DNA of 64,000 bases, taken from positions 211,102 to 275,101 of the IMG/VR virus record IMGVR_UViG_3300029258_002750. One strand, given 5' to 3'. Shown here one piece after another: positions 7,397 to 43,209 of the stretch (position 1 is its first letter; each line of letters starts with the position of its first letter). The notes beneath the pieces are model-generated. The model had not been told where the DNA came from, made no database searches, and saw nothing but the letters and a program-made list of their open reading frames with translations. The position numbers and the translations under genes are program-made.

Positions 7397-8688
7397 TGAG
7401 TCCCTTCTTCCGATTCGTGAAGAACATCCGAGATCGCGGCCTGGAGTACGTCACAGGCAGGCACTACTCGAAGTATCAGGGGACCGTCGTCGACAACGAG
7501 GATCCGCAGGGCCAGGGCCGAGTCAGGGTCAGCTGCGAGTCGGTGACCGGCCGCAAGGGTGAGCTGAGTATCTGGGCCTACCCCAGCTCGGACTTCGCTG
7601 GGCCGGACAAGGGTATCTTCTTCCCCCCGAACAAGGACGACAAGGTCTGGGTCTGGTTCGACTACGGCGACCTCCGTGTGCCGAGGTTCTCCGGGTCCTG
7701 GTGGGGGAACAGGGACCAGGACAAGGGCGCGAACGGCGCCCAGGTGCCGAAGGAGTTCGCGACCGAGGGCGGCGAGCCCACGAAGCGCGGTATCAAGACG
7801 AAGGCGGGTCTCGGACTCCTGTTCGAGGACAAGGCTGGCGAGCAGAAGGTCCAGGTCTGGACCGGCGCCCAGGGAGAGGCGGGAACCGAGGCCGAGAAGC
7901 ACCACCAGATGACCCTCTCCGACAAGAGCGGGGAGGAGCAGATCGTTATCGCGTCGTTCGGGGGGCGTCAGTCCAGTTGGATCGACATCTCCGGCCAGGA
8001 GGCGATCGAGCACAGGTCCGCGAACGACCACTTCATCAAGATCAGCGACGCCCAGGACAACATCGTCCTCCAGCTCGCGAACGGGAACACGATCAAGATC
8101 GAGACGAACCCCAGCAAGATCACCGTGCAGACGACCGGCCAGCAGAAGGCCGAGTTCTTCGACTCGCCTGCCTCGATCAACGTGCAGGACGCGAACGGGA
8201 ACATCGTCAACATGGGTCCGACCGGCGTGAACGTCAATGCAGCCGCGCTGGTGAACGTGGTGGCCGGAACGACCGCGAACGTCACGGCTGGCGGGGCTGC
8301 GACCGTGACGGCCGCCGGTCTCCTGACGCTCGCCGGTAACGGTCTGACGATGCAGAGCACGGGGTCAGCGCCGACCCAGATCACAGGCGGCGGGGTCGCG
8401 AATGAGACGTTCGCCGGGGCCAAGACGTCGCAGGATGGGGGCTCGATCCACACGTCCACAGGCCCGTGGCGGGTGACTGGCGCAGGGGTCGAGCTGATCT
8501 CGGCCCTCGGGTCCTCGACCTGCTTCGTGGGCGCGAACGGGGTCAAGTACCGGCTCGTCGATGAGCGGTTCTTGGTCTGGGCCGAGAACCACACGCATCT
8601 GCTCGGCTTCAGCGGTGCGCCGACTGGCAAGCCGATCCAGCCGGTCATACCGAACCTCATGGCTACCGACGCGCTGAGGGGGAACTGA
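7396..8688 (+). CDS. Baseplate spike (gpV/gp5/VgrG OB-fold plus beta-helix)
   Basis: GTVVDNEDPQGQGRVRV, FFPP..D.VWV.F..GD..P; C-terminal HxH (NHTH) metal-binding tip. Confidence 0.9.
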   Translation: MSPFFRFVKNIRDRGLEYVTGRHYSKYQGTVVDNEDPQGQGRVRVSCESVTGRKGELSIWAYPSSDFAGPDKGIFFPPNKDDKVWVWFDYGDLRVPRFSGSWWGNRDQDKGANGAQVPKEFATEGGEPTKRGIKTKAGLGLLFEDKAGEQKVQVWTGAQGEAGTEAEKHHQMTLSDKSGEEQIVIASFGGRQSSWIDISGQEAIEHRSANDHFIKISDAQDNIVLQLANGNTIKIETNPSKITVQTTGQQKAEFFDSPASINVQDANGNIVNMGPTGVNVNAAALVNVVAGTTANVTAGGAATVTAAGLLTLAGNGLTMQSTGSAPTQITGGGVANETFAGAKTSQDGGSIHTSTGPWRVTGAGVELISALGSSTCFVGANGVKYRLVDERFLVWAENHTHLLGFSGAPTGKPIQPVIPNLMATDALRGN

Positions 8689-19477: not shown

Positions 19478-21343
19478 ATGGCGAGCTTCCCTACATACGA
19501 CTTCACCGAAGAGTTCGTGAAGACTCGCTTCTTGGAGCCGTTCGCGGGTGATGCCATCAACGTGCGCGCGCTCGCCCTTCCGCGAGGTGTGTATCTGGGC
19601 TTCATCCCGCAGACGACGCCAGGCTCCGACATCCTGGTGCTGGCCACCGACCCGAACCACAACTTCTCCAAGCTGTCGGTCGGTTCCCAGACCAGGAAGA
19701 TGAACGTCGACCTCTTCACGGCCAACGATGTGGACCTGAACTTCAACGGACACACCGTGTTCCCGGTCTACGTGATCGCAAGGGCGGACTACCGAGACAA
19801 GATCGCGACCCAGGCCAAGATCCTGACGAGGGCGACGACCGCCTCCGGGCCACAGGAGGTGCTGATTTGCAAGGTGGACAAGGTCGGCGCTGACCTTACG
19901 GTCACGTACGACTTCCCGGACACGCGTCAGCCGCCGATCGCGTTCGACGGGCAAGTGGTCGGATTCATGCCTGACGACGCGATCACCGACCTGGAGATCG
20001 GCAACTCGACGCGGGCCGAGGTTACCGACGCGCGGCTGTCGGCGCACACGACGCCCGCGCCGCACCCGAGCCTGGCCGATCGTATCGAAGCCGATCTGGT
20101 CGGTCCGTCGATGGCCGACCGACTCGGCTACCGGCTCAGTCTCCTCGTCGGCAACCTGGTAACGGGGGTGGCCGGAACAGCGACGAATGTGTCCGGTTCG
20201 TTTGCGGCCACGAATCGCGAGTTCGCTCCTCTGATCGACGTCGTCCCCGGCGGAACAGAGACGGACGAGGGCGCGCTCACCGACCCTACCGACACGCTCC
20301 GCAACCTGTGTTTCGTCGTGGACGGAGGCACCGGCCAGCGGGTCGTCGACTCGACCAGCCGGGAGCCGATTTACGGCAGTCTCGTGTTCACGGAGTCGGC
20401 CCCCGGCTCCGACATCTCCGGCAACGTGTCCGGGACGATCAACTTCTACAACGGCACAACCACCGTCGATGGGACCGGCAACCCGTTCGCCTCCATCCAA
20501 GAGGGCGACCTGGTCAAGGCGACGAGTCCGCCTGGCGACGACAGGTGGTACGAGATCGCCGAGATCGACGACGCGAACAACGCCACGCTGGGAGCCGCCT
20601 TCCAAGGCGGGACGCCTGGAGGTCCGGCCATTCCCGTCGTCAATCCGCCGTTCCGTCGGTACACCCTGAACTTCTTCACCGTGTCGGGTGGTGCTCACTC
20701 GATGCCGGGTGGCAGCTCGATCAGGTTCCTCTTCCCGGCCTTCTACCGCGCCGACAGGTCGATCTTCGATGGGTGGCTGCTCCTCAAGCGGAACGGTGAG
20801 CTGCCGCCGGTGCCCGATGCGACCGAGTCCACGCCCGGCAAGGCGCTGCTCGCAGCCCCAGACGGCAAGGTGGGCTCGCTCAGATCGGTCGAGAACAACG
20901 GAACGCCGGTTGGCAACGACTACCACACGCTCAACTTCGTCTACGGCGGTGCCTCGGACGCTGGTCTGGGCGTGGCCGAGGTGTCGGTAATCGGCGCGAA
21001 GGGGCCGAAGGGGGCTGACTCGAACCCGGGTCCAACGGGGCCGCAGGGAGACCCCGGCTACGGCTTCACGAACTGCAACCCGTTCGAGAAGGATTCGTTG
21101 TGGGTCGGCCCTGGCCCGACGGTCTCGAAGTCGTTCACGGTCGATTTCAGCTCGGTGTCCCCGTCGATCTCTTCGATCCGACACGTCTGGGGCGGCCTCG
21201 CCGGATTGCGAGGGTTCAACCAGGGGAGAGAGATCAGAATCGACCACCTCAGCTTCTCCGGCTCGACGGGCCGGATCGACGGTCGCCTGATCGGCGCGGC
21301 CGAAAACATCTACTTCAAGCTATGGTTGGGGGCCTGCGAATGA
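19478..21343 (+). CDS. Tail fibre protein, paralog 3 of 3
   Basis: PRGVYLGFIP, GFMP, HTLNF, Gly-X-Y run. Confidence 0.75.
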   Translation: MASFPTYDFTEEFVKTRFLEPFAGDAINVRALALPRGVYLGFIPQTTPGSDILVLATDPNHNFSKLSVGSQTRKMNVDLFTANDVDLNFNGHTVFPVYVIARADYRDKIATQAKILTRATTASGPQEVLICKVDKVGADLTVTYDFPDTRQPPIAFDGQVVGFMPDDAITDLEIGNSTRAEVTDARLSAHTTPAPHPSLADRIEADLVGPSMADRLGYRLSLLVGNLVTGVAGTATNVSGSFAATNREFAPLIDVVPGGTETDEGALTDPTDTLRNLCFVVDGGTGQRVVDSTSREPIYGSLVFTESAPGSDISGNVSGTINFYNGTTTVDGTGNPFASIQEGDLVKATSPPGDDRWYEIAEIDDANNATLGAAFQGGTPGGPAIPVVNPPFRRYTLNFFTVSGGAHSMPGGSSIRFLFPAFYRADRSIFDGWLLLKRNGELPPVPDATESTPGKALLAAPDGKVGSLRSVENNGTPVGNDYHTLNFVYGGASDAGLGVAEVSVIGAKGPKGADSNPGPTGPQGDPGYGFTNCNPFEKDSLWVGPGPTVSKSFTVDFSSVSPSISSIRHVWGGLAGLRGFNQGREIRIDHLSFSGSTGRIDGRLIGAAENIYFKLWLGACE

Positions 21344-25829: not shown

Positions 25830-28206
25830 CGTGACGACCATCATCGCGAAGAACCAGACCGCAGGCGACCTCGCGCTCACGCGCTTGGTTGCGCCCGATG
25901 CCAAGATCCCGGCGAGCGGCCAGGCCCAGCTGACCGACTGGAACGCGCCCTACGAGATCACGATCGACCCGGAGCTGGTCGCCTACATCAACGCCGACCA
26001 GGTGCTCCTGAACATCGACGGCGTGGACCTGACCAAGGCGGAGAGCCTGACGGCCGCCGAGCAGAAGGTCGCGGGCACGAACATCGGCAACCTGGTCGAG
26101 GTTGTGGATGTTGGCGGAAGTGTCGCCGGACTACCGGCGCTGGACGGCTCCTTGCTCACCAATCTGGCGGCCTCCGGCGCCTACCGGCTTCCCCCGAACC
26201 TCGTGCTGGTGGATCCAGCCCAGCCAGCCCTGGTCGGGGTTCGATACCAGACATGGGCCGCCGCCGACACCTACGTGGCAACGCAAACACCGTCCTCCAC
26301 GAACAGGTGGGGCATCCAGATCACCGGCACGAACAGCGAGAACATCGTCGTGCGCCCGTGGGTGGTCATCGTGGGGATGCCAGAAGGGTCCACGAGGCTC
26401 ACCGGCAACCTGACCTCGACGGTCAGCTTCAACGGCACAGGCGACCCCACCATCGGGCTCGTGCGCGAGTGCGAAGTCGCCAGTCTCGCTTTCTCGGCCG
26501 CGAACGAGTGGACCATCTTCCACAACTGCAAGCTGACGGGAGGAACTCCCACCGGAGGTTGGTGCCGACTCGACCATTGCCGCGTGGATGGCGGCAACTA
26601 CTTCAACATGGATCTGATGCAGATCTACCGCAGCATCGTCGATGGTTCCGGCGGCGGCTTCCCGGACGTGGTCCAGGCGCACTGGACCAGGTTCGCGTCG
26701 AACTACACCCTGCGGGGCGGCAACTTCAACTTCTGCGAGATCTTCATCGGCGGCACCACAACCTACCTGGCCGGGAGCTACACGCTCTGGAACTGCGTCA
26801 GCTACGCTGCGCTGAACGCGGCCAGCGCCGGGCATCGGATCAGGATTCTCAACACCATCCTGGTGGGAAACCCCACGATCACCCTCAACCCCGGTGACCT
26901 GACCACGCGCTCGGTCGTGGGGGACTTCGCCGTCTCTAACACAGGCGGCAACTGGACCAACGAGGGCGACTTCTACGACAACACGGCCTCCGGCCTCGCG
27001 GCGGATGAGGTCCAGGCGGCCATCGACGAGATCGTGGCCGGTCTGCCCACTGGCGATGTCGTCGGGCCGGGAAGCTCGACTACCAACAACGTGCCCCAGT
27101 TTGCGGACACGTCCGGCAAGCTCCTGAAGGATGGGCTGACGCCTGGCGGCGCAAATGGTCTGGCCACGCTCAACTCGGGCAGCAAGGTACCGCTGATCCA
27201 GCTCCCAGCTTCGCAGACGCCAGCTGTGGACACGATTCCCGTCTCTGGCTCGGTTCAGCCCACGATCAACCCAGGTTGGCTCCCGGGCGCGTCCGAGAGC
27301 GCGCAGGGCGCTATCGAGATCGCCACCCAGACCGAGACCGACACCGGCACGGACAATACGCGTGCTGTTACTCCGCTCAAGCTAGCTGGTCGAACGGCTA
27401 CAGAAACGCGCGCTGGTATTGCCGAGCTTGCGACTCAGGCCGAGACGGATACCGGTACAGACGATGCCAGGATCGTCACCCCGCTCAAGCTCAAGGGAAG
27501 GGTGCCGCGCACGGACTTCGGCGCATCGGCCAGTGACCCAGCCGGGTCTCCTGTTGACGGGGACATCTACTACAACACGGCGCTCGACAAGGAAATGCGA
27601 TACGACGCGACGAGAGCTAAGTGGCTTTCGGTTGCCGAGGCCGCCTACCAGTTCGGCCGCAACGGAGACACGCCTAGCGGCTCGTTCTATCGCGGTATCA
27701 ACGGGCTTGCGTTTTCTGCTACGCGGGGGCTGACTATGCCGCATGACGGAACAATTGTCGCCCTGGGCTATCACCGGGATGATTCAGATGCTGCAACCTT
27801 TGCGATTAGAAACAATACGACAGCAAGCGTCGTTGTGACAGTCGCCTCGACCGCTAACAAGGGAGTTGACTCGTCACTGAACGCTAACTTCTCGGCCCAG
27901 GACGTTCTCGCTCCCGGCAACAATACGGGCTCTAATACGACCTCCAATGTAATCGGCTGGTTCAAGGTCAAATGGAGGGTGTAGCGTATGACTACGATCA
28001 TCGCTAAGAATCAGACGGCCGGTGACCTGTTGCTGACATTGCTGTCAGTACCAGACACTGTGATTCCAGCCTCCGGCCAAGTCCAGTTGACGGATTGGAA
28101 CACAGTCACAGAAATTCAAAACGATCCCGAACTGCTTGCTTACATTAACAGCGATCAGGTGCTGCTGAACATCGACGGCGAGGACCAGACCAAGGCGCAG
28201 AGTCTT
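25353..28206 (+). repeat. Two diverged copies (about 25353-26049 and 27508-28206) of a unit spanning gene end, stop and next gene start
   Basis: YYNTALD.EMRYDATRAKW...W.KV.WR* then TTIIAKNQTAGDL...IPASGQ.QLTDWN...DQVLLNIDG in both copies. Confidence 0.85.
25831..27984 (+). CDS. Tail fibre/spike: module Y, beta-helix-like region, fibre repeats, module X
   Basis: Starts TTIIAKNQTAGDL; two ATQ.ETDTGTD..R.VTPLKL repeats; ends KVKWRV. Confidence 0.8.
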   Translation: MTTIIAKNQTAGDLALTRLVAPDAKIPASGQAQLTDWNAPYEITIDPELVAYINADQVLLNIDGVDLTKAESLTAAEQKVAGTNIGNLVEVVDVGGSVAGLPALDGSLLTNLAASGAYRLPPNLVLVDPAQPALVGVRYQTWAAADTYVATQTPSSTNRWGIQITGTNSENIVVRPWVVIVGMPEGSTRLTGNLTSTVSFNGTGDPTIGLVRECEVASLAFSAANEWTIFHNCKLTGGTPTGGWCRLDHCRVDGGNYFNMDLMQIYRSIVDGSGGGFPDVVQAHWTRFASNYTLRGGNFNFCEIFIGGTTTYLAGSYTLWNCVSYAALNAASAGHRIRILNTILVGNPTITLNPGDLTTRSVVGDFAVSNTGGNWTNEGDFYDNTASGLAADEVQAAIDEIVAGLPTGDVVGPGSSTTNNVPQFADTSGKLLKDGLTPGGANGLATLNSGSKVPLIQLPASQTPAVDTIPVSGSVQPTINPGWLPGASESAQGAIEIATQTETDTGTDNTRAVTPLKLAGRTATETRAGIAELATQAETDTGTDDARIVTPLKLKGRVPRTDFGASASDPAGSPVDGDIYYNTALDKEMRYDATRAKWLSVAEAAYQFGRNGDTPSGSFYRGINGLAFSATRGLTMPHDGTIVALGYHRDDSDAATFAIRNNTTASVVVTVASTANKGVDSSLNANFSAQDVLAPGNNTGSNTTSNVIGWFKVKWRV

Positions 28207-28950
28207 GCGGCCCAGTCCACAGTGTCCTTTCCGGTTGACGACACGACCGAACTCGTCCGCGATCCTGTCGATACAACGAAGCGACTACGGCTAGACGCTG
28301 GGGCGGTCACGACAGGTACAACGAGGATAGTCTCTGTTCCAGACAAGAACGTCACGCTGGACGACGCGGCAGATTCCCGAGATCCGAACACGCACGCGAG
28401 TAGCCACCGGAACGGCGGCACTGACGAAGTAGCCACGGCAACCCCGGCCGCGAACGCGATCCCCAAGGCGGACGGTTCAGCCAAGCTCGATGGATGGGTT
28501 ACTGCCGATGTCGCTGGACCTTCGTCAGCAACGGACAACGCTGTTGCTAGGTTTGACGGTACGACGGGGAAGGTGGTCCAGGGGTCGGACGTAGTCATTG
28601 ACGACGACGGCGCTGTCTCCAACGTCGAGCGGATCGCCTACAAGACGGAGATCAACAACGGAAACAGCGGCGCGACGAAGACTATCGACTGGACAGCCGG
28701 TCAGAAGCAACGTGTGACCATGACAGCCGACTGCACGTTCTCCTTCACGGCGCCCGCCGGGCCTACCAACCTGTTGCTCAAGTTGGTACAGGATGTCACC
28801 GGCGGACACGACGCGACCTGGCCGGGTTCCGTGCTATGGGCGAAAGGCAAGGCGCCGAACCTCACAAACGGCGGCGATGCCATCGATATCGTCACGTTCT
28901 ACTACGACGGGACGAACTACTTCGGCGTGGCGAGCCTGGACTTCAGCTAG
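27988..28950 (+). CDS. Fibre protein with N-terminal module Y
   Basis: MTTIIAKNQTAGDL; GPSSATDNAVARFDGTTGK; TIDWTAG...TWPGSVLW..G.AP tip domain. Confidence 0.8.
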   Translation: MTTIIAKNQTAGDLLLTLLSVPDTVIPASGQVQLTDWNTVTEIQNDPELLAYINSDQVLLNIDGEDQTKAQSLAAQSTVSFPVDDTTELVRDPVDTTKRLRLDAGAVTTGTTRIVSVPDKNVTLDDAADSRDPNTHASSHRNGGTDEVATATPAANAIPKADGSAKLDGWVTADVAGPSSATDNAVARFDGTTGKVVQGSDVVIDDDGAVSNVERIAYKTEINNGNSGATKTIDWTAGQKQRVTMTADCTFSFTAPAGPTNLLLKLVQDVTGGHDATWPGSVLWAKGKAPNLTNGGDAIDIVTFYYDGTNYFGVASLDFS

Positions 28951-36139: not shown

Positions 36140-38233
36140 ATGGCAACTGCAACTCTCGTCAAGCGCACCTCTCGGGCGCACATGCAAGTGCTCCCGGACA
36201 CGGACGATGCCGTCATCGGCAGCATCGTCCGGTCCACCGCTGGAGCGATGAAGATCGGTGACGACACGAACTCGACGTCGATCCAGCTCGGCGGCGCTGC
36301 TGCCGACAACGTCACGCAGATCGACATCGGGCAGGACTCGGGGATGACCTCCCTGACTACCCTGAACCTCGCCACCGTAGCCACCATGACCGCGCTGAAC
36401 ATCGGCACGGGCATGGGGTCCGGTGACACGATCGCGATCGGTGCTACCGGGACCGCTGTGAACATCCCGGCTACGGTGACGATCACCGACCTGACGGTCA
36501 ACGGAACGACCACAACGGTCTCGACCACGAACCTGTCCGTTGCGGACGACCTGATCATCCTCCGGGGCGACTCGTCGGCCCAGGCGGCGGCCGACTCCGG
36601 CATCGTGGTCGAGCGCGGTACGACCAGCGCGGACGACGCGATCTGGCTCTGGAGCGAGACGAACGATCGCTTCGAGCTGGGCTTGTTCGCCTCGAACAAC
36701 GGAGCCAACAGCGCGCCTTCGGACGTGACTACGGCGGGCTACAAGGATCTCAAGATCCTCAACCTGCTGCTGGATGGCACTGGCGTCACGTTCGATGGCG
36801 CAGGTACGGTCGCGGCCACAGGTGCGGTCCTCAGCCTCGACGGCACCGGGATCGAGACCAGCGCGGCCACGATCACGGCGGACGCAGGGCTCGACATCGT
36901 CACGACCACGACCGGCAACCTGGTCCTCGACAGCGGGACCACTGGCTCGGTTAGCTTGGGCGTGGACGCCGCCAACGCCAAGACCGTGACGGTTGGCGCG
37001 TCAGCTGGCGCTTCGACAACCGCCATCGAGTGCGGCACGGGCGGCCTGAACCTCGGAACCACGGCCAACGCTCACACGGTCACCCTGGGCAGCACGACGG
37101 GCGCGAGCGCGACCACGATCCAGTGCGGCACCGGAGCCATGACCTTTACGGCGGGCGGCGCCTTCGACGTCAACACCGCCGGTGCGGTCACCATCGACAG
37201 CTCTGGTGGGACGATCAGCATCGGTGCCGACGACGTCGATCAGGCGATCAACATCGGCGGCCAGGGCGAGCGCACTACAACGATCGGCAACAACGTCGGG
37301 GCCAACGGGATCGCGCTCGAGACTGGAACCGGTGGACTGGGCGTGGACGCCGATGGCGACTCCACCTGGACCATGTTCGACTGGACCATCACGCTCAACG
37401 AGACCCAGACGGCCGGGTCCACCACGGCGGGTAACCCGTACGCGCTGACGGCTGGCGCTGGCGCAGCGGCCGATGCGGCTGCGGCTGGTGGTGTCGGTGG
37501 CGCGATCGGTCTGACGGCCGGTGTCGGTGGTGCGGGCGACGACAACCCGCAGGATGGCGGCGCGGGTGGCGCGCTCACGATCACGTCTGGTGTTGGCGGG
37601 GTCTCAGGCAACAACGCCGGTTCGACCTCGGGCGCTGGTGGCGACGTTCTGATCGTTGCTGCGGACGCAGGAGCGATCGTCGGTGCCGGAGCCAAGGGGA
37701 ACCCTGGCCGTGTGGCCTTCACCTCCGGGACGACCCAGTACTACCTGACGGCTGCTGGGACCGGGCCTGCGCTCGCTACTACGGCACAGACGATCATCGA
37801 GGCGATCAACGAGGTTGCGGGCGGCACGTCCTCGGCCGCGACCATGATCACCACGACCTTCGCCACGACCGGGCTCACGGTCGGGGCTCCGTGCTACGTG
37901 TCGGCGCTCGACACGGCTTCGGAGTGCGACGCCGACGCGGTCGCCACGTCGGATGTGATCGGCTTCGTCAAGACGGTCGGCGCGGCCGGAACCGGCGAGG
38001 TCGTCCTGGGCGGCGTGACCAACATGGCCTTCGAGGTCGGGCTCAACGTCCTCCCCGGCGAGGTGATCTACCTCTCGACCGTCACCGGCCGCGTGACCAA
38101 CGTCGCCCCGTCTGGGACGGGTGATACGGTCTACGAGGTCGGATTCGCGAACGACTCCGAGGCGGGCGGCGCCACGACCGATGGTGAGGCGCTCGAGTGC
38201 GTCATTCACTTCGGTTCCCGGGTCGTCGTCTAG
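36140..38233 (+). CDS. Long beta-fibre protein B with cement-like C-terminal domain
   Basis: VNGTTTTVSTTNL.V.D.LIIL..G...ERG...W.E.NDRFELGLF; paralog of 43209. Confidence 0.75.
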   Translation: MATATLVKRTSRAHMQVLPDTDDAVIGSIVRSTAGAMKIGDDTNSTSIQLGGAAADNVTQIDIGQDSGMTSLTTLNLATVATMTALNIGTGMGSGDTIAIGATGTAVNIPATVTITDLTVNGTTTTVSTTNLSVADDLIILRGDSSAQAAADSGIVVERGTTSADDAIWLWSETNDRFELGLFASNNGANSAPSDVTTAGYKDLKILNLLLDGTGVTFDGAGTVAATGAVLSLDGTGIETSAATITADAGLDIVTTTTGNLVLDSGTTGSVSLGVDAANAKTVTVGASAGASTTAIECGTGGLNLGTTANAHTVTLGSTTGASATTIQCGTGAMTFTAGGAFDVNTAGAVTIDSSGGTISIGADDVDQAINIGGQGERTTTIGNNVGANGIALETGTGGLGVDADGDSTWTMFDWTITLNETQTAGSTTAGNPYALTAGAGAAADAAAAGGVGGAIGLTAGVGGAGDDNPQDGGAGGALTITSGVGGVSGNNAGSTSGAGGDVLIVAADAGAIVGAGAKGNPGRVAFTSGTTQYYLTAAGTGPALATTAQTIIEAINEVAGGTSSAATMITTTFATTGLTVGAPCYVSALDTASECDADAVATSDVIGFVKTVGAAGTGEVVLGGVTNMAFEVGLNVLPGEVIYLSTVTGRVTNVAPSGTGDTVYEVGFANDSEAGGATTDGEALECVIHFGSRVVV

Positions 38234-38740: not shown

Positions 38741-39163
38741 ATGTCGTCCCTGAAGCTGCTCAGGCGGTACGGGACGAGGGCGTTCGGCCAAGCAGTGGCG
38801 GCTCCGTTCGTCCTCGAGACCGTGTCCGGCATCAACGCGCTGTCGGAGACCGAGACATCCCTCTATACAGTGCCCACCGGCGAGGAAGTGGTCGTCATCG
38901 GGGTCGTGCTCCGGTGTACGGCGGCCAGCGGCATCACTACTGCGCCAAAGGCCGGGGTCGGAATCGCAGCGGGCGCCGACGACATCTTCACGTCGCAGCG
39001 GTGCTACGGGCTGCTCGCGGACGGCGATGAGTTCCAGTTCCCACAGGGAGGGATCAGGAGAATCGCCGACGCAGGTGAGGAGATCAAGCTGGGCATCGAT
39101 GAAGCAGCCGTGGGGACCTCGATGACCCTGGCAGCTGACGTGCTGGGATATGGGGCGGTGTAG
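38741..39163 (+). CDS. Virion protein C, paralog of 42556
   Basis: V.RC..A.GI.....G.G...G.D.IF....YGL...D..GY. Confidence 0.75.
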   Translation: MSSLKLLRRYGTRAFGQAVAAPFVLETVSGINALSETETSLYTVPTGEEVVVIGVVLRCTAASGITTAPKAGVGIAAGADDIFTSQRCYGLLADGDEFQFPQGGIRRIADAGEEIKLGIDEAAVGTSMTLAADVLGYGAV

Positions 39164-39165
39164 AC

Positions 39166-39333
39166 ATGGCTTGGAAGCTCACTCTTGAGGGCGGCGCGGA
39201 GATGACCGCCAGCGATCAGGTGCGGACGCCTGGGGGGCTCGTGGCCGCCTCGTCAATCGAGGTCGGGGACCTGGTCTGCATCTTCCCCGATGGGCACATG
39301 CCGGTTGAGGTCACCGACGTCGAAGAGGTCTAG
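39166..39333 (+). CDS. 55-aa protein resembling half a Hint domain (not in ORF track)
   Basis: MAWKLTLEGGAEMTASDQVRTPGGLVAASSIEVGDLVCIFPDGHMPVEVTDVEEV; fills the operon gap. Confidence 0.75.
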   Translation: MAWKLTLEGGAEMTASDQVRTPGGLVAASSIEVGDLVCIFPDGHMPVEVTDVEEV

Positions 39334-39338
39334 GCGAG

Positions 39339-39518
39339 ATGGCGATCAAGATCACTCTCGTTGACGTAGACGACTCCGAAGTCTACTTCGCCAACACCAC
39401 ACTGGTGACACTCGTGGGCGGAGCTACGAAGGCTGCTTCTGATCTAGCGGAGGACGATCAAATCGTCCTTGCGCTCGCCGGAGAGGTAAAAGTGGCGACC
39501 GTTGAGGAGATCGAGTAA
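39339..39518 (+). CDS. 59-aa protein resembling half a Hint domain (not in ORF track)
   Basis: MAIKITLVDVDDSEVYFANTTLVTLVGGATKAASDLAEDDQIVLALAGEVKVATVEEIE; TAATG coupling to the next gene. Confidence 0.75.
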   Translation: MAIKITLVDVDDSEVYFANTTLVTLVGGATKAASDLAEDDQIVLALAGEVKVATVEEIE

Positions 39519-40978
39519 TGGCGCTTCCGCCTGTCCTGTTCGCTCGGCTCGAAAACGGCGGCGGAGAGGCCACCGGCTACCGATTGCTCGCCGGAACCGC
39601 GCTGTCTGAGATCCCAGACGACAACGTGGACATCGGCTCGGCCCAAGGCGAGAGCGGGCTGAACTACCAGTATCAGCGGAAGCCGCTGAACCACATGGTC
39701 CGGTTTGGGAACAAGGTGTTCGTCTGGGTCAAGAACATCATCTACAGCATCAACACCGCAACCGACTCTTGGGACGTTGCGCACACCACGACCATAGGCA
39801 CGCCCAACTCCGACCACTCCGGCCTGTACCACATCGAGATCAACGGTGTTCCTTCACTGATCGGGTTCTACGGCGCCAACGTGGTCCTCATGTACAACGG
39901 CAACACGGATTCGTGGTCTGAGACCACCTTGCCTTTGTCCGTGGTATCCCCCAGTCAGTCGGAGGTCTTCATCTACAGGAACGTCGTCTTCTGCGCTAGC
40001 TCCGGCGGCGGCACCTACGTCTGGTGGTGGGATCCTTCAGGGTCGTCACTGGGCACGCAGAACTTGTCGCCATCTGGTGTGTCCTTCGCGGTGCACAAGG
40101 GCGTTCTCTACATGCTCTTGTACTTCCACACGAGTCCTACGCAGCCCCACATGTACCGCTTCACCGGTGCAGGCTGGACCTCGTCTGGCCTCGCCTACAT
40201 CGGCGTTAACTCCAACCCGGGCGGCGTCCGTGTCGAGCACATCTATGCGAACAGTCCTGACGAGAAGATGCCTGAACTGGTAGACATCGATGGCAAGCTC
40301 TACGCCTTCGTGTGGGGCCGCCTGACGGGCTCGGGCGACCTCTACAGCCACCTGGAAATCTACGAGTACGACGCCACGGGCGACTATATCGACATGAGCA
40401 CCGACGAGGTCAGGATCACCACGTCGGTCAGTCCATTCCAGTCTTCCAGTAGCGGCCTTCACCATCCCAGCATTCACGTCTTCCAAGACTTCGACACGGA
40501 CCCGACCAACCCAGAGACATATTTCTTCATCAACGGTCGTCGCGACCAAGACTCTTGGGTGACCTACAAGTGGAACGGTCCTAGCAGTTTGATGACCTAT
40601 GTGGGCGCCATCGGTGCATGGGGGCTCGCTCCATCGCAGTCGAAGGATGGCGGAGGACAGCGCGTCTGGACCGAGGGTGTACCGAACGTCCAGATCACCG
40701 GCATCACGAAGAGTTCAGACGGGATGACGATCTCGTTCAAGGCGTATGGCGGTGATACCGGCAAGATCGTCAAGATCTACGTGAACGGGCAGGAGGGTCC
40801 GCCGACCGCCCTGGCGACCCTGACCGGGACGGCGACGGGCGGCAGCGCAACCAGAAACGGGAACCAGGTCGAGAACATCAGCGCCGACGGTTCAACTACG
40901 TATACCGTCGGCTGGGACTTCTTCTCCGACGGGCTGTCGATTGGTCAGTACGCCAACCTCGCGCCCAGGATCGAGTAG
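39518..40978 (+). CDS. Putative receptor-binding protein D (beta-propeller-like plus conserved C-terminal Ig-like domain)
   Basis: Paralog of 41080; PNVQITG...ISFKAYGG...TGGSATRNGN...WDFF. Confidence 0.7.
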   Translation: MALPPVLFARLENGGGEATGYRLLAGTALSEIPDDNVDIGSAQGESGLNYQYQRKPLNHMVRFGNKVFVWVKNIIYSINTATDSWDVAHTTTIGTPNSDHSGLYHIEINGVPSLIGFYGANVVLMYNGNTDSWSETTLPLSVVSPSQSEVFIYRNVVFCASSGGGTYVWWWDPSGSSLGTQNLSPSGVSFAVHKGVLYMLLYFHTSPTQPHMYRFTGAGWTSSGLAYIGVNSNPGGVRVEHIYANSPDEKMPELVDIDGKLYAFVWGRLTGSGDLYSHLEIYEYDATGDYIDMSTDEVRITTSVSPFQSSSSGLHHPSIHVFQDFDTDPTNPETYFFINGRRDQDSWVTYKWNGPSSLMTYVGAIGAWGLAPSQSKDGGGQRVWTEGVPNVQITGITKSSDGMTISFKAYGGDTGKIVKIYVNGQEGPPTALATLTGTATGGSATRNGNQVENISADGSTTYTVGWDFFSDGLSIGQYANLAPRIE

Positions 40979-41079: not shown

Positions 41080-42552
41080 ATGGCTGCCCCACCTTATCTT
41101 TGCTCTCGCAGGTATGGAGGTACCAGTCCGCAGGTTTACCGGGCATTGAACGGTAAGACGCTCTCGCAGGTAGGGAACAACTTCGGGACGCTGGAAGATC
41201 TCGGGGCAGTCGTCTTCCCCTGCAACAGCGTTGTGGAGTTTGGCGGTGATCTGTACTGCTGGCAGTGGAACACGATCTACAAGTACAACTCCGGGACCGG
41301 CAACTGGGACTCCGACTACGCAGTTCCTTCCTACGACACAGGTGACGACGAGAGGCGAACAGGTCTCTACATCATCAACGTGAGTGGCACTCCTACCTTG
41401 ATCGGACTGCACCGCCGGTCGGCCGGAAACATCTGGGACGTGCGCCTTCCTCTCGGAGGCTCGTGGAGCAACAACAACACCGGCATTGACGAGATCGGCG
41501 GGGATCTCTTCCGAATGGGTTACATCGGCGGGTGTTTCGTCTGGCGGGACCTCTTCTGGATGGTTGGCTCTCAAAATCCACCCAAGGTCATGTCCTGGGA
41601 TCCTGCGAATAGCGTCGCAGTTGTCCACACGCTTCCAGGCACATCTGGCTCTACGTGCGGAGGCACCGCCAGCACATTCGTAATTCTCAACAACGACCTC
41701 TACGTGATAGGGGCCAGGACCATCAACAACGCAGAGGACTACATCACCCTCTGGCGGTTTCAATCGGGAGCGTTCGTTGCGGTTCAGAACATCGGGTCCA
41801 CTGTCGTAGGCACTGGTCTGTTGAGAGGAAACGGCTCCAATCCGAACAGAGACCACTACGCGGCTTGGTCAGACGGGACGAACATCTTTTGTATTGTGCG
41901 CGGAGCTAGCACCAGCGTGTCTACCGGCGGGCTCTATGCCTTCAAACTGGCGCCAAGCGGCTCGACGTTCACCGAGACGAACATCACCAACCCTGTGGTC
42001 CCAAGCGCGTATCGCCAGGGTAGTATGCAAGCAACCGACTACCCCAGGTGGTGGGTAGTCAAGGACAACGACACAGATCCCACGAGCCCAGACGTCTACT
42101 TCTATTTCTCGCTCAACTACGGTTCGGCTGCCGTCCTGCACTATGTGTGGGAAGGCGAATCAACGCTGATGAGCGACGGGACATCGCTCGGTTCTGGCGA
42201 GCTTTCCATGCCGGACGCGAACCAGACGGCTGGCGAGCGTGCCTGGACCAGCAGCGAACCGAACGTCCTGATTACAGGTCTCGCTCAAGGCACTGGCGGG
42301 CTGACCATCTCGTTCAAAGCCTGGGGCGGCGGGACCAAGACGGTCAAGTTCTATTACTCCCTTGAAGAGGAGACCCCCACGTCTCAATGCACCCTGACCG
42401 GGTCTGCAACCGGAGGGTCAGCGACGAGGAGCGGTAATACGGTCACCAACGTGAGCGCGGACGGAGCTACGACCTATACGATCACCTGGGACTTCTTTAC
42501 GGACGGCGCCTTCATCGGCGGACGGTTCGAGGTTCTGTCTTACATCGAGTAG
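41080..42552 (+). CDS. Putative receptor-binding protein D' (paralog of 39518)
   Basis: GLY.I...G.P.LIG, D.DTDPT.P..YF, highly similar C-domain. Confidence 0.7.
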   Translation: MAAPPYLCSRRYGGTSPQVYRALNGKTLSQVGNNFGTLEDLGAVVFPCNSVVEFGGDLYCWQWNTIYKYNSGTGNWDSDYAVPSYDTGDDERRTGLYIINVSGTPTLIGLHRRSAGNIWDVRLPLGGSWSNNNTGIDEIGGDLFRMGYIGGCFVWRDLFWMVGSQNPPKVMSWDPANSVAVVHTLPGTSGSTCGGTASTFVILNNDLYVIGARTINNAEDYITLWRFQSGAFVAVQNIGSTVVGTGLLRGNGSNPNRDHYAAWSDGTNIFCIVRGASTSVSTGGLYAFKLAPSGSTFTETNITNPVVPSAYRQGSMQATDYPRWWVVKDNDTDPTSPDVYFYFSLNYGSAAVLHYVWEGESTLMSDGTSLGSGELSMPDANQTAGERAWTSSEPNVLITGLAQGTGGLTISFKAWGGGTKTVKFYYSLEEETPTSQCTLTGSATGGSATRSGNTVTNVSADGATTYTITWDFFTDGAFIGGRFEVLSYIE

Positions 42553-42555
42553 GTT

Positions 42556-43209
42556 GTGGGCAACGCCGGATCCAGGGCAGGCGGATTTGCAGACGGGTCT
42601 CGGACTAGTGGTGCCGGATCCAGGGCAGGCGGTGCTCTAGAGTCGACCTGGGCCGAAGGGCCTCCCGTCTCCGTGTTGGCGGATACGGTCGGTGCGGTCG
42701 ACTACGCGCAAGGGCCTCCGGCGTATACCTTGGTCGACACGGTCGGCGCAGTTGACTACGCGCAAGGCCCTCCCGTCAGCGCCGAGTTGGACGCCGACGT
42801 TGACCCCACCGGGAAGATGCTGGCACCTGGATCGGTGCTCACGGCCATCGGTACTAGCAAGATCGGCGGCAAGGACAACGTTGATCTCACGGCTGAAGGC
42901 ATTCACCATCTCTTTACCGCAGGGGAAGACCAGACGGCGATCATCCGCTACCTGGTGATCCGCTGCAAATCGGCGACGGGTATCTCGGTTCCGGCCAAGG
43001 TGGGATTGGGAACGAACACGGGAGAAGACAACATCTTCACCCCTCGCCGCCTCTACGGTCTGACCGCGTCCGGCCTGGCCTACGTCTTCGCGGCCGATGG
43101 AGGAGGTAGTCGCGTCGGTTCCCTTGTATCCATTAGACTAGGGGTCGATGAGGGGGCGACGGGCACCTCCCAGCTCGCCGACGTTGACCTGATGGGATAC
43201 GTGTTCTGA
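42556..43209 (+). CDS. Virion protein C' with N-terminal peptide repeats
   Basis: AGSRAGG twice, GPP....DTVGAVDYA twice; C-domain like 38741. Confidence 0.7.
   Translation: MGNAGSRAGGFADGSRTSGAGSRAGGALESTWAEGPPVSVLADTVGAVDYAQGPPAYTLVDTVGAVDYAQGPPVSAELDADVDPTGKMLAPGSVLTAIGTSKIGGKDNVDLTAEGIHHLFTAGEDQTAIIRYLVIRCKSATGISVPAKVGLGTNTGEDNIFTPRRLYGLTASGLAYVFAADGGGSRVGSLVSIRLGVDEGATGTSQLADVDLMGYVF

What the first reader, a model, noticed from the sequence alone, without database searches (positions are those of the whole stretch)
39166..39518. Two tiny ORFs that look like stand-alone half-Hint domains
Seen: 55-aa and 59-aa ORFs below the ORF-track cut-off, similar to each other (K.TL...A(A)S.[IL]...D.[VI]...V.V..VEE). 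They match the Hint repeat pattern (I.LEDG.EI.AT...T..G...A.DL..GD.V...V..IE, and F...T.V.L..G..K...DL...D.V) but lack the N-terminal Cys and C-terminal His-Asn. Established: the Hint fold is pseudo-two-fold symmetric and is proposed to derive from a duplicated half-domain. Inference: non-catalytic half-Hint proteins that dimerise and serve as structural or chaperone partners of the downstream propeller protein.
Basis: partly seen in the sequence, partly recalled or inferred. Interest (0 to 1): 0.7.

Follow-up and report, generated by a model that had tools for sequence, protein, structure and literature searches.

The report
Stand-alone half-Hint phage tail proteins
Two tiny neighbouring genes in a 275-kb phage each encode one of the two symmetric halves of the intein/Hedgehog "Hint" fold, with no catalytic residues, and genes of this family always sit just before a Kelch-propeller gene in a tail-fibre region, so they may be a natural free-standing example of the half-domain from which the Hint fold is thought to have been built.

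Summary
Both ORFs (39166-39333, 55 aa; 39339-39518, 59 aa) are real genes. Codon usage is positive only in their own frames. Both are intact in five strain variants. orf55 belongs to a family of about 15 clusters of 55-63-aa phage proteins under clear purifying selection (codon-position identity 0.69/0.82/0.25 against a 48%-GC relative). orf59 is a fast-diverged paralogue (hhalign 95%, E 2.9e-8).

Cys1, the block-B His and the C-terminal His-Asn are all absent, and there is no extein.

In every context recovered, the small gene lies directly upstream of, and is translationally coupled to, a Kelch-type propeller gene in a tail-fibre region. Relatives carry one copy; only this phage lineage carries two.

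The half-Hint reading is therefore supported. Dimerisation is untested, because the one complex job gave no answer. The partner role rests on synteny alone.

The parts
39166..39333 (+). orf55: the conserved member of a 55-63-aa phage protein family, equal to one symmetry unit of the Hint fold. Six beta strands. No catalytic residues.
   Evidence: ORF and sequence; relatives; AF2 pLDDT 91.8; Hint matches.
39339..39518 (+). orf59: a diverged paralogue of orf55 with the same predicted fold. It has lost the family's conserved P22, G34 and D42. It is present only in this phage lineage. Its stop overlaps the start of g486.
39504..39520 (+). Coupling junction. The GAGGAG inside the last codons of orf59 (39504-39509) acts as a Shine-Dalgarno sequence for g486. 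TAA (39516-39518) overlaps ATG (39518-39520).
   Evidence: Read directly from the sequence. The same arrangement occurs in L011, L013, L016 and L017.
39518..40978 (+). g486: a Kelch-type beta-propeller protein with a conserved ~50-aa N-terminal segment and a C-terminal beta domain. It is the constant downstream partner gene of the family.
   Evidence: Homologues; Atlas structure TM 0.56 to Kelch clusters; family profile against PDB Kelch propellers, E 1e-7; synteny.
41080..42552 (+). g490: a paralogue of g486 (34% identity) that also carries the N-terminal segment.
38741..39163 (+). g140b: a 140-aa protein of unknown fold. A gene of ~137-150 aa precedes the small ORF in most relatives.
   Evidence: Gene tables. 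No Pfam, PHROG or PDB match.
42556..43209 (+). g217: its C-terminal ~100 aa is a paralogue of g140b (39% identity). It closes the duplicated module.
25831..28950 (+). Two upstream tail-fibre genes that set the functional context (tail fibre / host recognition module).
   Evidence: PHROG hits: tail fiber proximal subunit 2e-26, tail collar fiber 1.6e-21, tail fiber protein 2.9e-11.

Best explanation
orf55 and orf59 are two protein-coding paralogues of a small phage family in which the whole protein is one symmetry-related unit of the Hint (Hedgehog/intein) fold. This is the contiguous central unit that in mini-inteins spans block B to just before block F. SHOWN: they are real conserved genes; they are sequence- and fold-related to Hint units; they have no nucleophile, no block-B His, no terminal His-Asn and no extein, so they cannot splice or cleave; and the family is always encoded directly upstream of, and translationally coupled to, a Kelch-type beta-propeller gene in a tail-fibre region. 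INFERRED: the product is made in fixed proportion with the propeller protein and acts as its non-catalytic structural adaptor or assembly partner. Because an isolated Hint unit is an open, elongated beta structure that in all known Hint domains packs against a second, two-fold-related unit, it most likely works as a dimer that rebuilds a Hint-like horseshoe. That would be a homodimer in relatives with a single copy, and possibly an orf55-orf59 heterodimer in this lineage after tandem duplication and asymmetric divergence. Sub-claim confidence: real conserved family 0.95; Hint-unit fold 0.85; homology (not convergence) with Hint 0.7; functional partner of the propeller 0.6; dimer that rebuilds a Hint-like fold 0.4.
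Confidence: 0.6

Rival explanations
1. Same fold, different mechanism. Each half-Hint protein works as a monomer that completes its open beta sheet with a segment of another protein. A candidate is the conserved ~50-aa N-terminal segment of the propeller, in a split-intein-like 'capture' without chemistry. It would not pair with a second half-Hint.
For: In L011 the two propeller paralogues not preceded by a small ORF (P0005, P0008) lack the N-terminal segment. In the window both propellers carry it and there are two small ORFs. P0007, which has the segment, turned out to have an uncalled family member upstream. Split inteins show that Hint pieces can associate in trans (established knowledge; for domain swapping).
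Against: The N-segment profile shows no similarity to the half-Hint profile or to any intein (hhalign probability 0.2%; PDB search). P0010 in L012 has the N-segment but no small ORF. The counts rest on very few loci.
Confidence: 0.25
2. Convergent look-alike. The family is an unrelated small beta-hairpin protein whose resemblance to a Hint unit is analogy, not common descent.
Confidence: 0.12
3. Decaying remnants of an intein, BIL domain or split-intein fragment, with no function of their own.
For: The phage carries two genuine inteins elsewhere (PF14890 over cut-off), so Hint sequences are available in this genome. The closest solved relative is a phage-type mini-intein.
Against: The family has a constant length, gene position and coupling across phages that differ in GC content by roughly 10-18 percentage points. 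Third codon positions are randomised while first and second positions are kept. There are no frameshifts or stops in five variants. There are no flanking extein halves. The A1 profile does not match the genome's own inteins.
Confidence: 0.03
4. Leader ORFs. What matters is the act of translating a short upstream frame, which delivers ribosomes to the propeller start through the overlapping stop/start. The peptide itself does not matter.
For: Stop/start overlap and a Shine-Dalgarno sequence embedded in the last codons are conserved. This also explains part of the conserved acidic C-terminus.
Against: Amino-acid conservation runs along the whole length, with invariant turn residues (T6, P22, G24, D42, G43). 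There is a confident, specific predicted fold. Third-position randomisation shows that selection acts on the protein, not only on the 3' end of the RNA.
Confidence: 0.04

Closest known systems
Central symmetry unit of mini-inteins (Pho PolII mini-intein 5bkh residues 76-138; gp41-1 intein 6qaz/6riz residues ~45-101)
   Different: In inteins the unit is covalently flanked by the other unit (the N-terminal ~70 plus C-terminal ~25 residues), carries the block-B Thr-x-x-His, and sits inside a host protein. Here it is the entire polypeptide, the His position is variable (D/T/S/N), and there is no extein.
Hedgehog C-terminal autoprocessing Hint domain (1at0) and bacterial intein-like (BIL) domains (2lwy, 6tmm)
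   Different: These are full two-unit Hint domains of ~135-150 aa with a Cys1 nucleophile, fused to cargo. The phage proteins are half that size and lack all catalytic positions.
Naturally split inteins (e.g. gp41-1, Npu DnaE)
   Same: A Hint fold assembled from separate polypeptides. This is a precedent for tight trans-association of Hint pieces.
   Different: Split inteins are cut asymmetrically (about 88-100 + 35 aa) and not at the symmetry boundary. Each piece is fused to an extein, and association leads to splicing (established knowledge). Here the pieces would be whole symmetric units without chemistry.
IF5A / EF-P N-terminal (KOW/SH3-like) domains, proposed in PMC7664689 as possible ancestors of the Hint subdomain
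   Same: Small free-standing beta domains compared with a Hint subunit.
Phage tail-fibre assembly chaperones and adaptors (e.g. T4 gp57A, lambda Tfa). Functional analogy from general knowledge only, not tested here.
   Same: Small proteins encoded next to receptor-binding tail proteins and needed in fixed proportion.
   Different: No sequence or fold relation was found (PHROGs gave nothing). The known examples usually lie downstream of the fibre gene. No Hint-like member is described in the searchable literature.

Membership tests
Hint superfamily (Hedgehog/intein fold) | Sequence similarity to Hint-clan profiles | tested here: inconclusive
   The family profile hits the gp41-1 intein at E 1.7e-5 and 5e-5. 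Curated Pfam models stay below cut-off: Hint_2 E 0.05-0.2 in 3 of 14 members, none for orf55 or orf59.
Hint superfamily (Hedgehog/intein fold) | Structure of the symmetry-related unit (strand order and geometry) | tested here: met
Hint superfamily (Hedgehog/intein fold) | Complete horseshoe of two pseudo-two-fold-related units in one chain (~130-150 aa) | tested here: not met
   The proteins are 55 and 59 aa and cover one unit only (TM by target 0.3-0.38). No complementary Hint segment was found in g140b, g486, the N-segment alignment or the longer homologues.
Inteins (class 1-3) | N-terminal nucleophile (Cys/Ser/Thr at position 1, block A) or the class-3 WCT triad | tested here: not met
   The proteins start Met-Ala-Trp/Ile. 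The block-A region belongs to the other unit, which is absent.
Inteins (class 1-3) | Block-B Thr-x-x-His | tested here: not met
   In the HMM alignment to gp41-1, the intein's S-E-E-H aligns to variable D/T/S/N positions. No conserved His is present.
Inteins (class 1-3) | C-terminal block F/G with terminal His-Asn (or Gln/Asp) and a +1 nucleophile | tested here: not met
   The proteins end in an acidic ...(V/I)EE(V/IE) tail followed by a stop.
Inteins (class 1-3) | Insertion in frame within a host protein (exteins) | tested here: not met
   These are independent ORFs with their own start and stop in all loci.
Split inteins | Fragments fused to the two halves of a split host gene | tested here: not met
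   There is no extein sequence. The flanking genes are complete proteins conserved as such.
New family: free-standing Hint-unit proteins coupled to phage Kelch-propeller genes | 55-63 aa; consensus M-A-x-L-K-I-T-L...V-R-T-P-x-G...L-x-V-G-D-x-x-C-L-F-x-D-G-x-x-P-V-x-I-x-x-I-E-E; gene directly upstream of a g486-like gene | tested here: met
   orf55 meets all of these. orf59 meets length, position and profile match, but has lost P22, G34 and D42.

The most novel reading that the evidence does not exclude
The family is a natural free-standing version of the single unit from which the Hint fold is proposed to have arisen by duplication, fusion and loop swapping. It would homodimerise into a truly C2-symmetric Hint-like horseshoe. 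In this phage a tandem duplication with asymmetric divergence (orf55 conserved, orf59 fast-evolving, 5 nt apart) would have produced a heterodimer, which is the step just before fusion in that scenario. Whether the family is an ancestral relic or a secondary reduction of a phage mini-intein, it would make the duplication hypothesis experimentally testable with natural proteins. It would also reveal a non-catalytic, structural use of the Hint unit in phage tail assembly.
Probability: 0.3. Interest if true: 0.85.

Novelty: new variant of a known kind. Interest (0 to 1): 0.72.

Why it matters

If it dimerises, it gives a direct experimental model for how the fold arose. It would also be a minimal scaffold for engineering symmetric or split Hint domains.

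For phage biology, it defines a previously unannotated small gene that accompanies Kelch-propeller proteins in tail-fibre regions of large environmental phages. Gene callers sometimes miss it: it was uncalled in L018.

Tried and rejected
**Complex prediction.** orf55 + orf59 with complex prediction gave "no answer": score 0.01, and ESMFold2 folded neither chain confidently (pLDDT ~57). This is not evidence for or against binding.

**Family libraries.** Pfam and PHROGs on both ORFs and eight neighbours gave nothing usable. DUF5357, DUF7406, DUF6799 and BAH hits are isolated, sub-threshold and inconsistent between members.

**Similar DNA.** A distant blastn of the 7.3-kb locus against GenBank phages found no match.

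**Long hits of the exhaustive search.** P0014, P0022 and P0025, with 5-10 matching stretches, were first taken as a sign of a tandem-repeat module. They were rejected after reading them: one is a perfect tandem-repeat artefact and the others are cadherin/VCBS-like low-complexity repeats.

**Fusion hypothesis.** The ~75 extra residues in P0004 and P0007 are an internal C-terminal insert, not an N-terminal half-Hint.

**Complementary Hint segment in neighbours.** hhalign of the family against g486, g140b and the propeller N-segment alignment found nothing.

**Other attempts.**
- The weak hit of orf55 at G000:53883-54002 (E 0.01, with a stop inside) was not recovered by the profile and was dropped.
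- The 90-aa ORF upstream of P0013 (L019) is not a member.
- Expression: only DNA metagenome runs were found, and no RNA run was listed.
- Pfam Hint_2 and PT-HINT scans of the genome do not see the ORFs.

Full report
**Setting.** The window is the last 64 kb of a complete 275,101-bp phage record with direct terminal repeats. It is held by sediment and seawater metagenome runs. Almost none of its large proteins match Pfam. Two genes at 25831-28950 match tail-fibre PHROGs. The finding lies in a tight + strand string:
- g697 (36140-38233), rich in Gly, Ala and Thr
- a 140-aa protein with weak matches to coiled-coil families
- g140b (38741-39163)
- orf55 (39166-39333)
- orf59 (39339-39518)
- g486 (39518-40978)
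- g490 (41080-42552)
- g217 (42556-43209)
- g734

g490 is a paralogue of g486 (34% identity). The C-terminus of g217 is a paralogue of g140b. No promoter- or terminator-like site above chance interrupts the string.

**Are the ORFs real?** Yes. Both exist exactly as described.
- Their codon usage scores +0.36 and +0.43 bits per codon in frame, like their neighbours, and is negative in the other five frames.
- Five strain variants from other samples (94-97% nucleotide identity over the locus) keep both intact. orf59 has two synonymous and no non-synonymous changes. orf55 has one synonymous change and two conservative V/A swaps.
- An exhaustive phmmer search of 1.84 billion representatives with orf55 found nine genuine relatives of 56-63 aa (E 4e-10 to 8e-4). 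Three long hits were repeat artefacts.
- Synteny searches through the downstream gene found further members, including one that the gene caller had missed in L018.
- Relatives have 47-49% GC, against roughly 60-65% for the genes of this locus (orf59 itself is 55%). Identity between orf55 and its L011 homologue is 0.69, 0.82 and 0.25 at codon positions 1, 2 and 3. Selection therefore acts on the protein.

**Are the two ORFs related to each other?** Pairwise the signal is marginal (z 3.1-3.4, p 0.006-0.011). The family profile settles it:
- hhalign gives 95% probability, E 2.9e-8, over the full length.
- In a six-frame scan of the whole genome the profile finds only orf55 (3e-29) and orf59 (5e-5).

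orf55 is the conserved member, 62% identical to the L011 protein, whose propeller is 66% identical to g486. orf59 has no relatives but itself in 5.8 billion proteins. It has lost the family's conserved P22, G34 and D42. Every relative has a single copy. orf59 is therefore a lineage-specific tandem duplicate that diverged quickly, while keeping the junction with g486.

**What fold?** Four lines agree.
1. *Sequence.* The family profile, searched against all PDB sequences, hits the gp41-1 mini-intein at E 1.7e-5. Profile 19-40 matches intein 8-29 and profile 4-58 matches intein 50-103, which are the two pseudo-repeats of the Hint fold. The result repeats when orf59 is included. MchDnaB-1 and a BIL domain appear below threshold. 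Three members give sub-threshold Pfam Hint_2 matches.
3. *Other structure libraries.* BFVD, AFDB clusters and the ESM Atlas return intein-bearing terminases, helicases and Hint-domain proteins.
4. *Language-model features.* These retrieve Hint-clan clusters for each ORF separately, at lead strength only.

**Which part of Hint?** The models always align to one contiguous stretch: 5bkh 75-138/139, gp41-1 45-100/101, and Hedgehog 311-376/377. In large inteins the stretch spans the homing-endonuclease insertion site. The paper on 5bkh describes that crystal form as an intein opened between its two symmetry-related units. One lobe is formed by residues -3 to 71 plus 144 to the end, and the other by Leu76-Ile138 (PMC8175363). 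Each small protein thus equals exactly one symmetry unit. The sequence-based and structure-based registers on gp41-1 agree within 1-3 residues.

**Non-catalytic.** The block-A nucleophile and the block F/G His-Asn belong to the missing unit. The block-B Thr-x-x-His aligns to variable D/T/S/N positions. The family's invariant residues (T6, P22, G24, D42, G43) are hairpin-turn residues. There is no extein. The phage does carry two genuine inteins elsewhere, and the family profile does not match them.

**Gene linkage.** In every context recovered through a family member, the small gene is directly followed by a 480-560-aa gene. Wherever DNA or sequence was available, that gene is a g486 homologue:
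- the window and its variants
- L011
- L013/L014/L015
- L016
- L017
- L018

The stop overlaps or nearly abuts the start. The conserved acidic tail (...IEE) is encoded by GAGGAG-type codons that sit where the Shine-Dalgarno sequence of the next gene should be. Part of that conservation may therefore act at the RNA level. The g486 family is a Kelch-type propeller (Atlas TM 0.56; profile against PDB Kelch domains E 1e-7) with a conserved ~50-aa N-terminal segment. The two most distant propeller homologues examined (25-30% identity; L012, L019) lack the small gene.

**Mechanism.**
- *Shown:* a conserved, non-catalytic, single-unit Hint-like protein co-encoded and translationally coupled with a Kelch propeller in a tail-fibre region.
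- *Inferred:* it is made in fixed proportion with the propeller and serves as its adaptor or assembly partner.
- *Further inferred:* it pairs with a second unit to close a Hint-like horseshoe, because in all known Hint domains a unit packs against its two-fold mate, and opened inteins re-pair in trans. That would be a homodimer where there is one gene, and perhaps an orf55-orf59 heterodimer here.
- *Main alternative:* a monomer completes its sheet with the propeller's N-terminal segment. This is suggested by a count pattern. In L011 one small gene goes with one segment-bearing propeller, and two paralogues lack the segment. In the window two go with two. P0007 carries the segment and has a hidden small ORF upstream. 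The segment shows no Hint similarity, and L012 is an exception.

The single complex job returned no answer and is not used as evidence.

**Verdict.** The half-Hint interpretation is supported for fold and for lack of catalysis. The partner role is supported by genomic context only. Dimerisation is untested. Novelty: a new variant of a known kind. Interest: 0.72.

Noticed in passing
Outside the window: G000:C1:42281-42628 and G000:C1:186676-187391: The same phage carries two genuine inteins (Pfam Intein_splicing over cut-off with neighbouring stretches), in open frames of 982 aa and 360/303 aa. The half-Hint profile does not match them.
   Followed up: partly
window 39504-39520; L011 ~7980-8003; L013 ~1115-1143; L016 ~740-762; L017 ~250-274: The conserved acidic C-terminus of the small proteins (...IEE) is encoded by GAGGAG-like codons 5-12 nt before the propeller start, so the coding sequence doubles as the downstream Shine-Dalgarno sequence. 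The stop overlaps or abuts the start.
   Followed up: yes
L011 9586-10914 and 11033-12376 (P0005, P0008), compared with window 39518-39680 and 41080-41230: Propeller paralogues not preceded by a small ORF lack the conserved ~50-aa N-terminal segment (M-A-x-P-P...Y-R-L-L-x-G-T). The number of segment-bearing propellers equals the number of half-Hint genes in the window (2:2) and in L011 (1:1). L012 is an exception.
   Followed up: partly
L018 737-910 (+): A 57-aa family member lies in a 188-nt 'intergenic' gap that the metagenome gene caller left empty. Such genes are likely to be under-annotated elsewhere too.
   Followed up: yes
window 38741-39163 and 42556-43209; 39518-40978 and 41080-42552: The module looks duplicated around the small ORFs: g140b and the C-terminus of g217 are paralogues (39%), and g486 and g490 are paralogues (34%). 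The order is g140b, orf55, orf59, g486, g490, g217. g140b has no match in Pfam, PHROGs or PDB sequences.
   Followed up: partly
window 39339-39518: orf59 has a lower GC content (55%; GC3 0.65) than orf55 (65.5%; GC3 0.82) and the flanking genes (58-67.5%). This is consistent with fast divergence or a different history of that copy.
   Followed up: no
P0004 residues ~415-490 and P0007 residues ~410-480 (g486 homologues; L017, L018): Two homologues carry a ~75-aa insert in the C-terminal beta domain, with a G-E-T-V...G-A-T-A-x-I...T-L-E-V-G motif typical of small beta modules in phage fibres. It is not related to the half-Hint profile.
   Followed up: partly
window 36140-38233: g697 is a Gly/Ala/Thr-rich 697-aa protein. 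It has no Pfam, PHROG or PDB match, and a large gene occupies the same relative position in relatives (1065 aa and 879 aa in the P0015 and P0017 contexts). It may be the fibre shaft of this module.
   Followed up: no
window 19802-20017 (-) and G000:C1:192156-192275 (+): Weak sub-threshold Pfam Hint_2 matches (E 0.017) elsewhere in the genome. The first lies antisense to a long + strand ORF and is probably noise.
   Followed up: no
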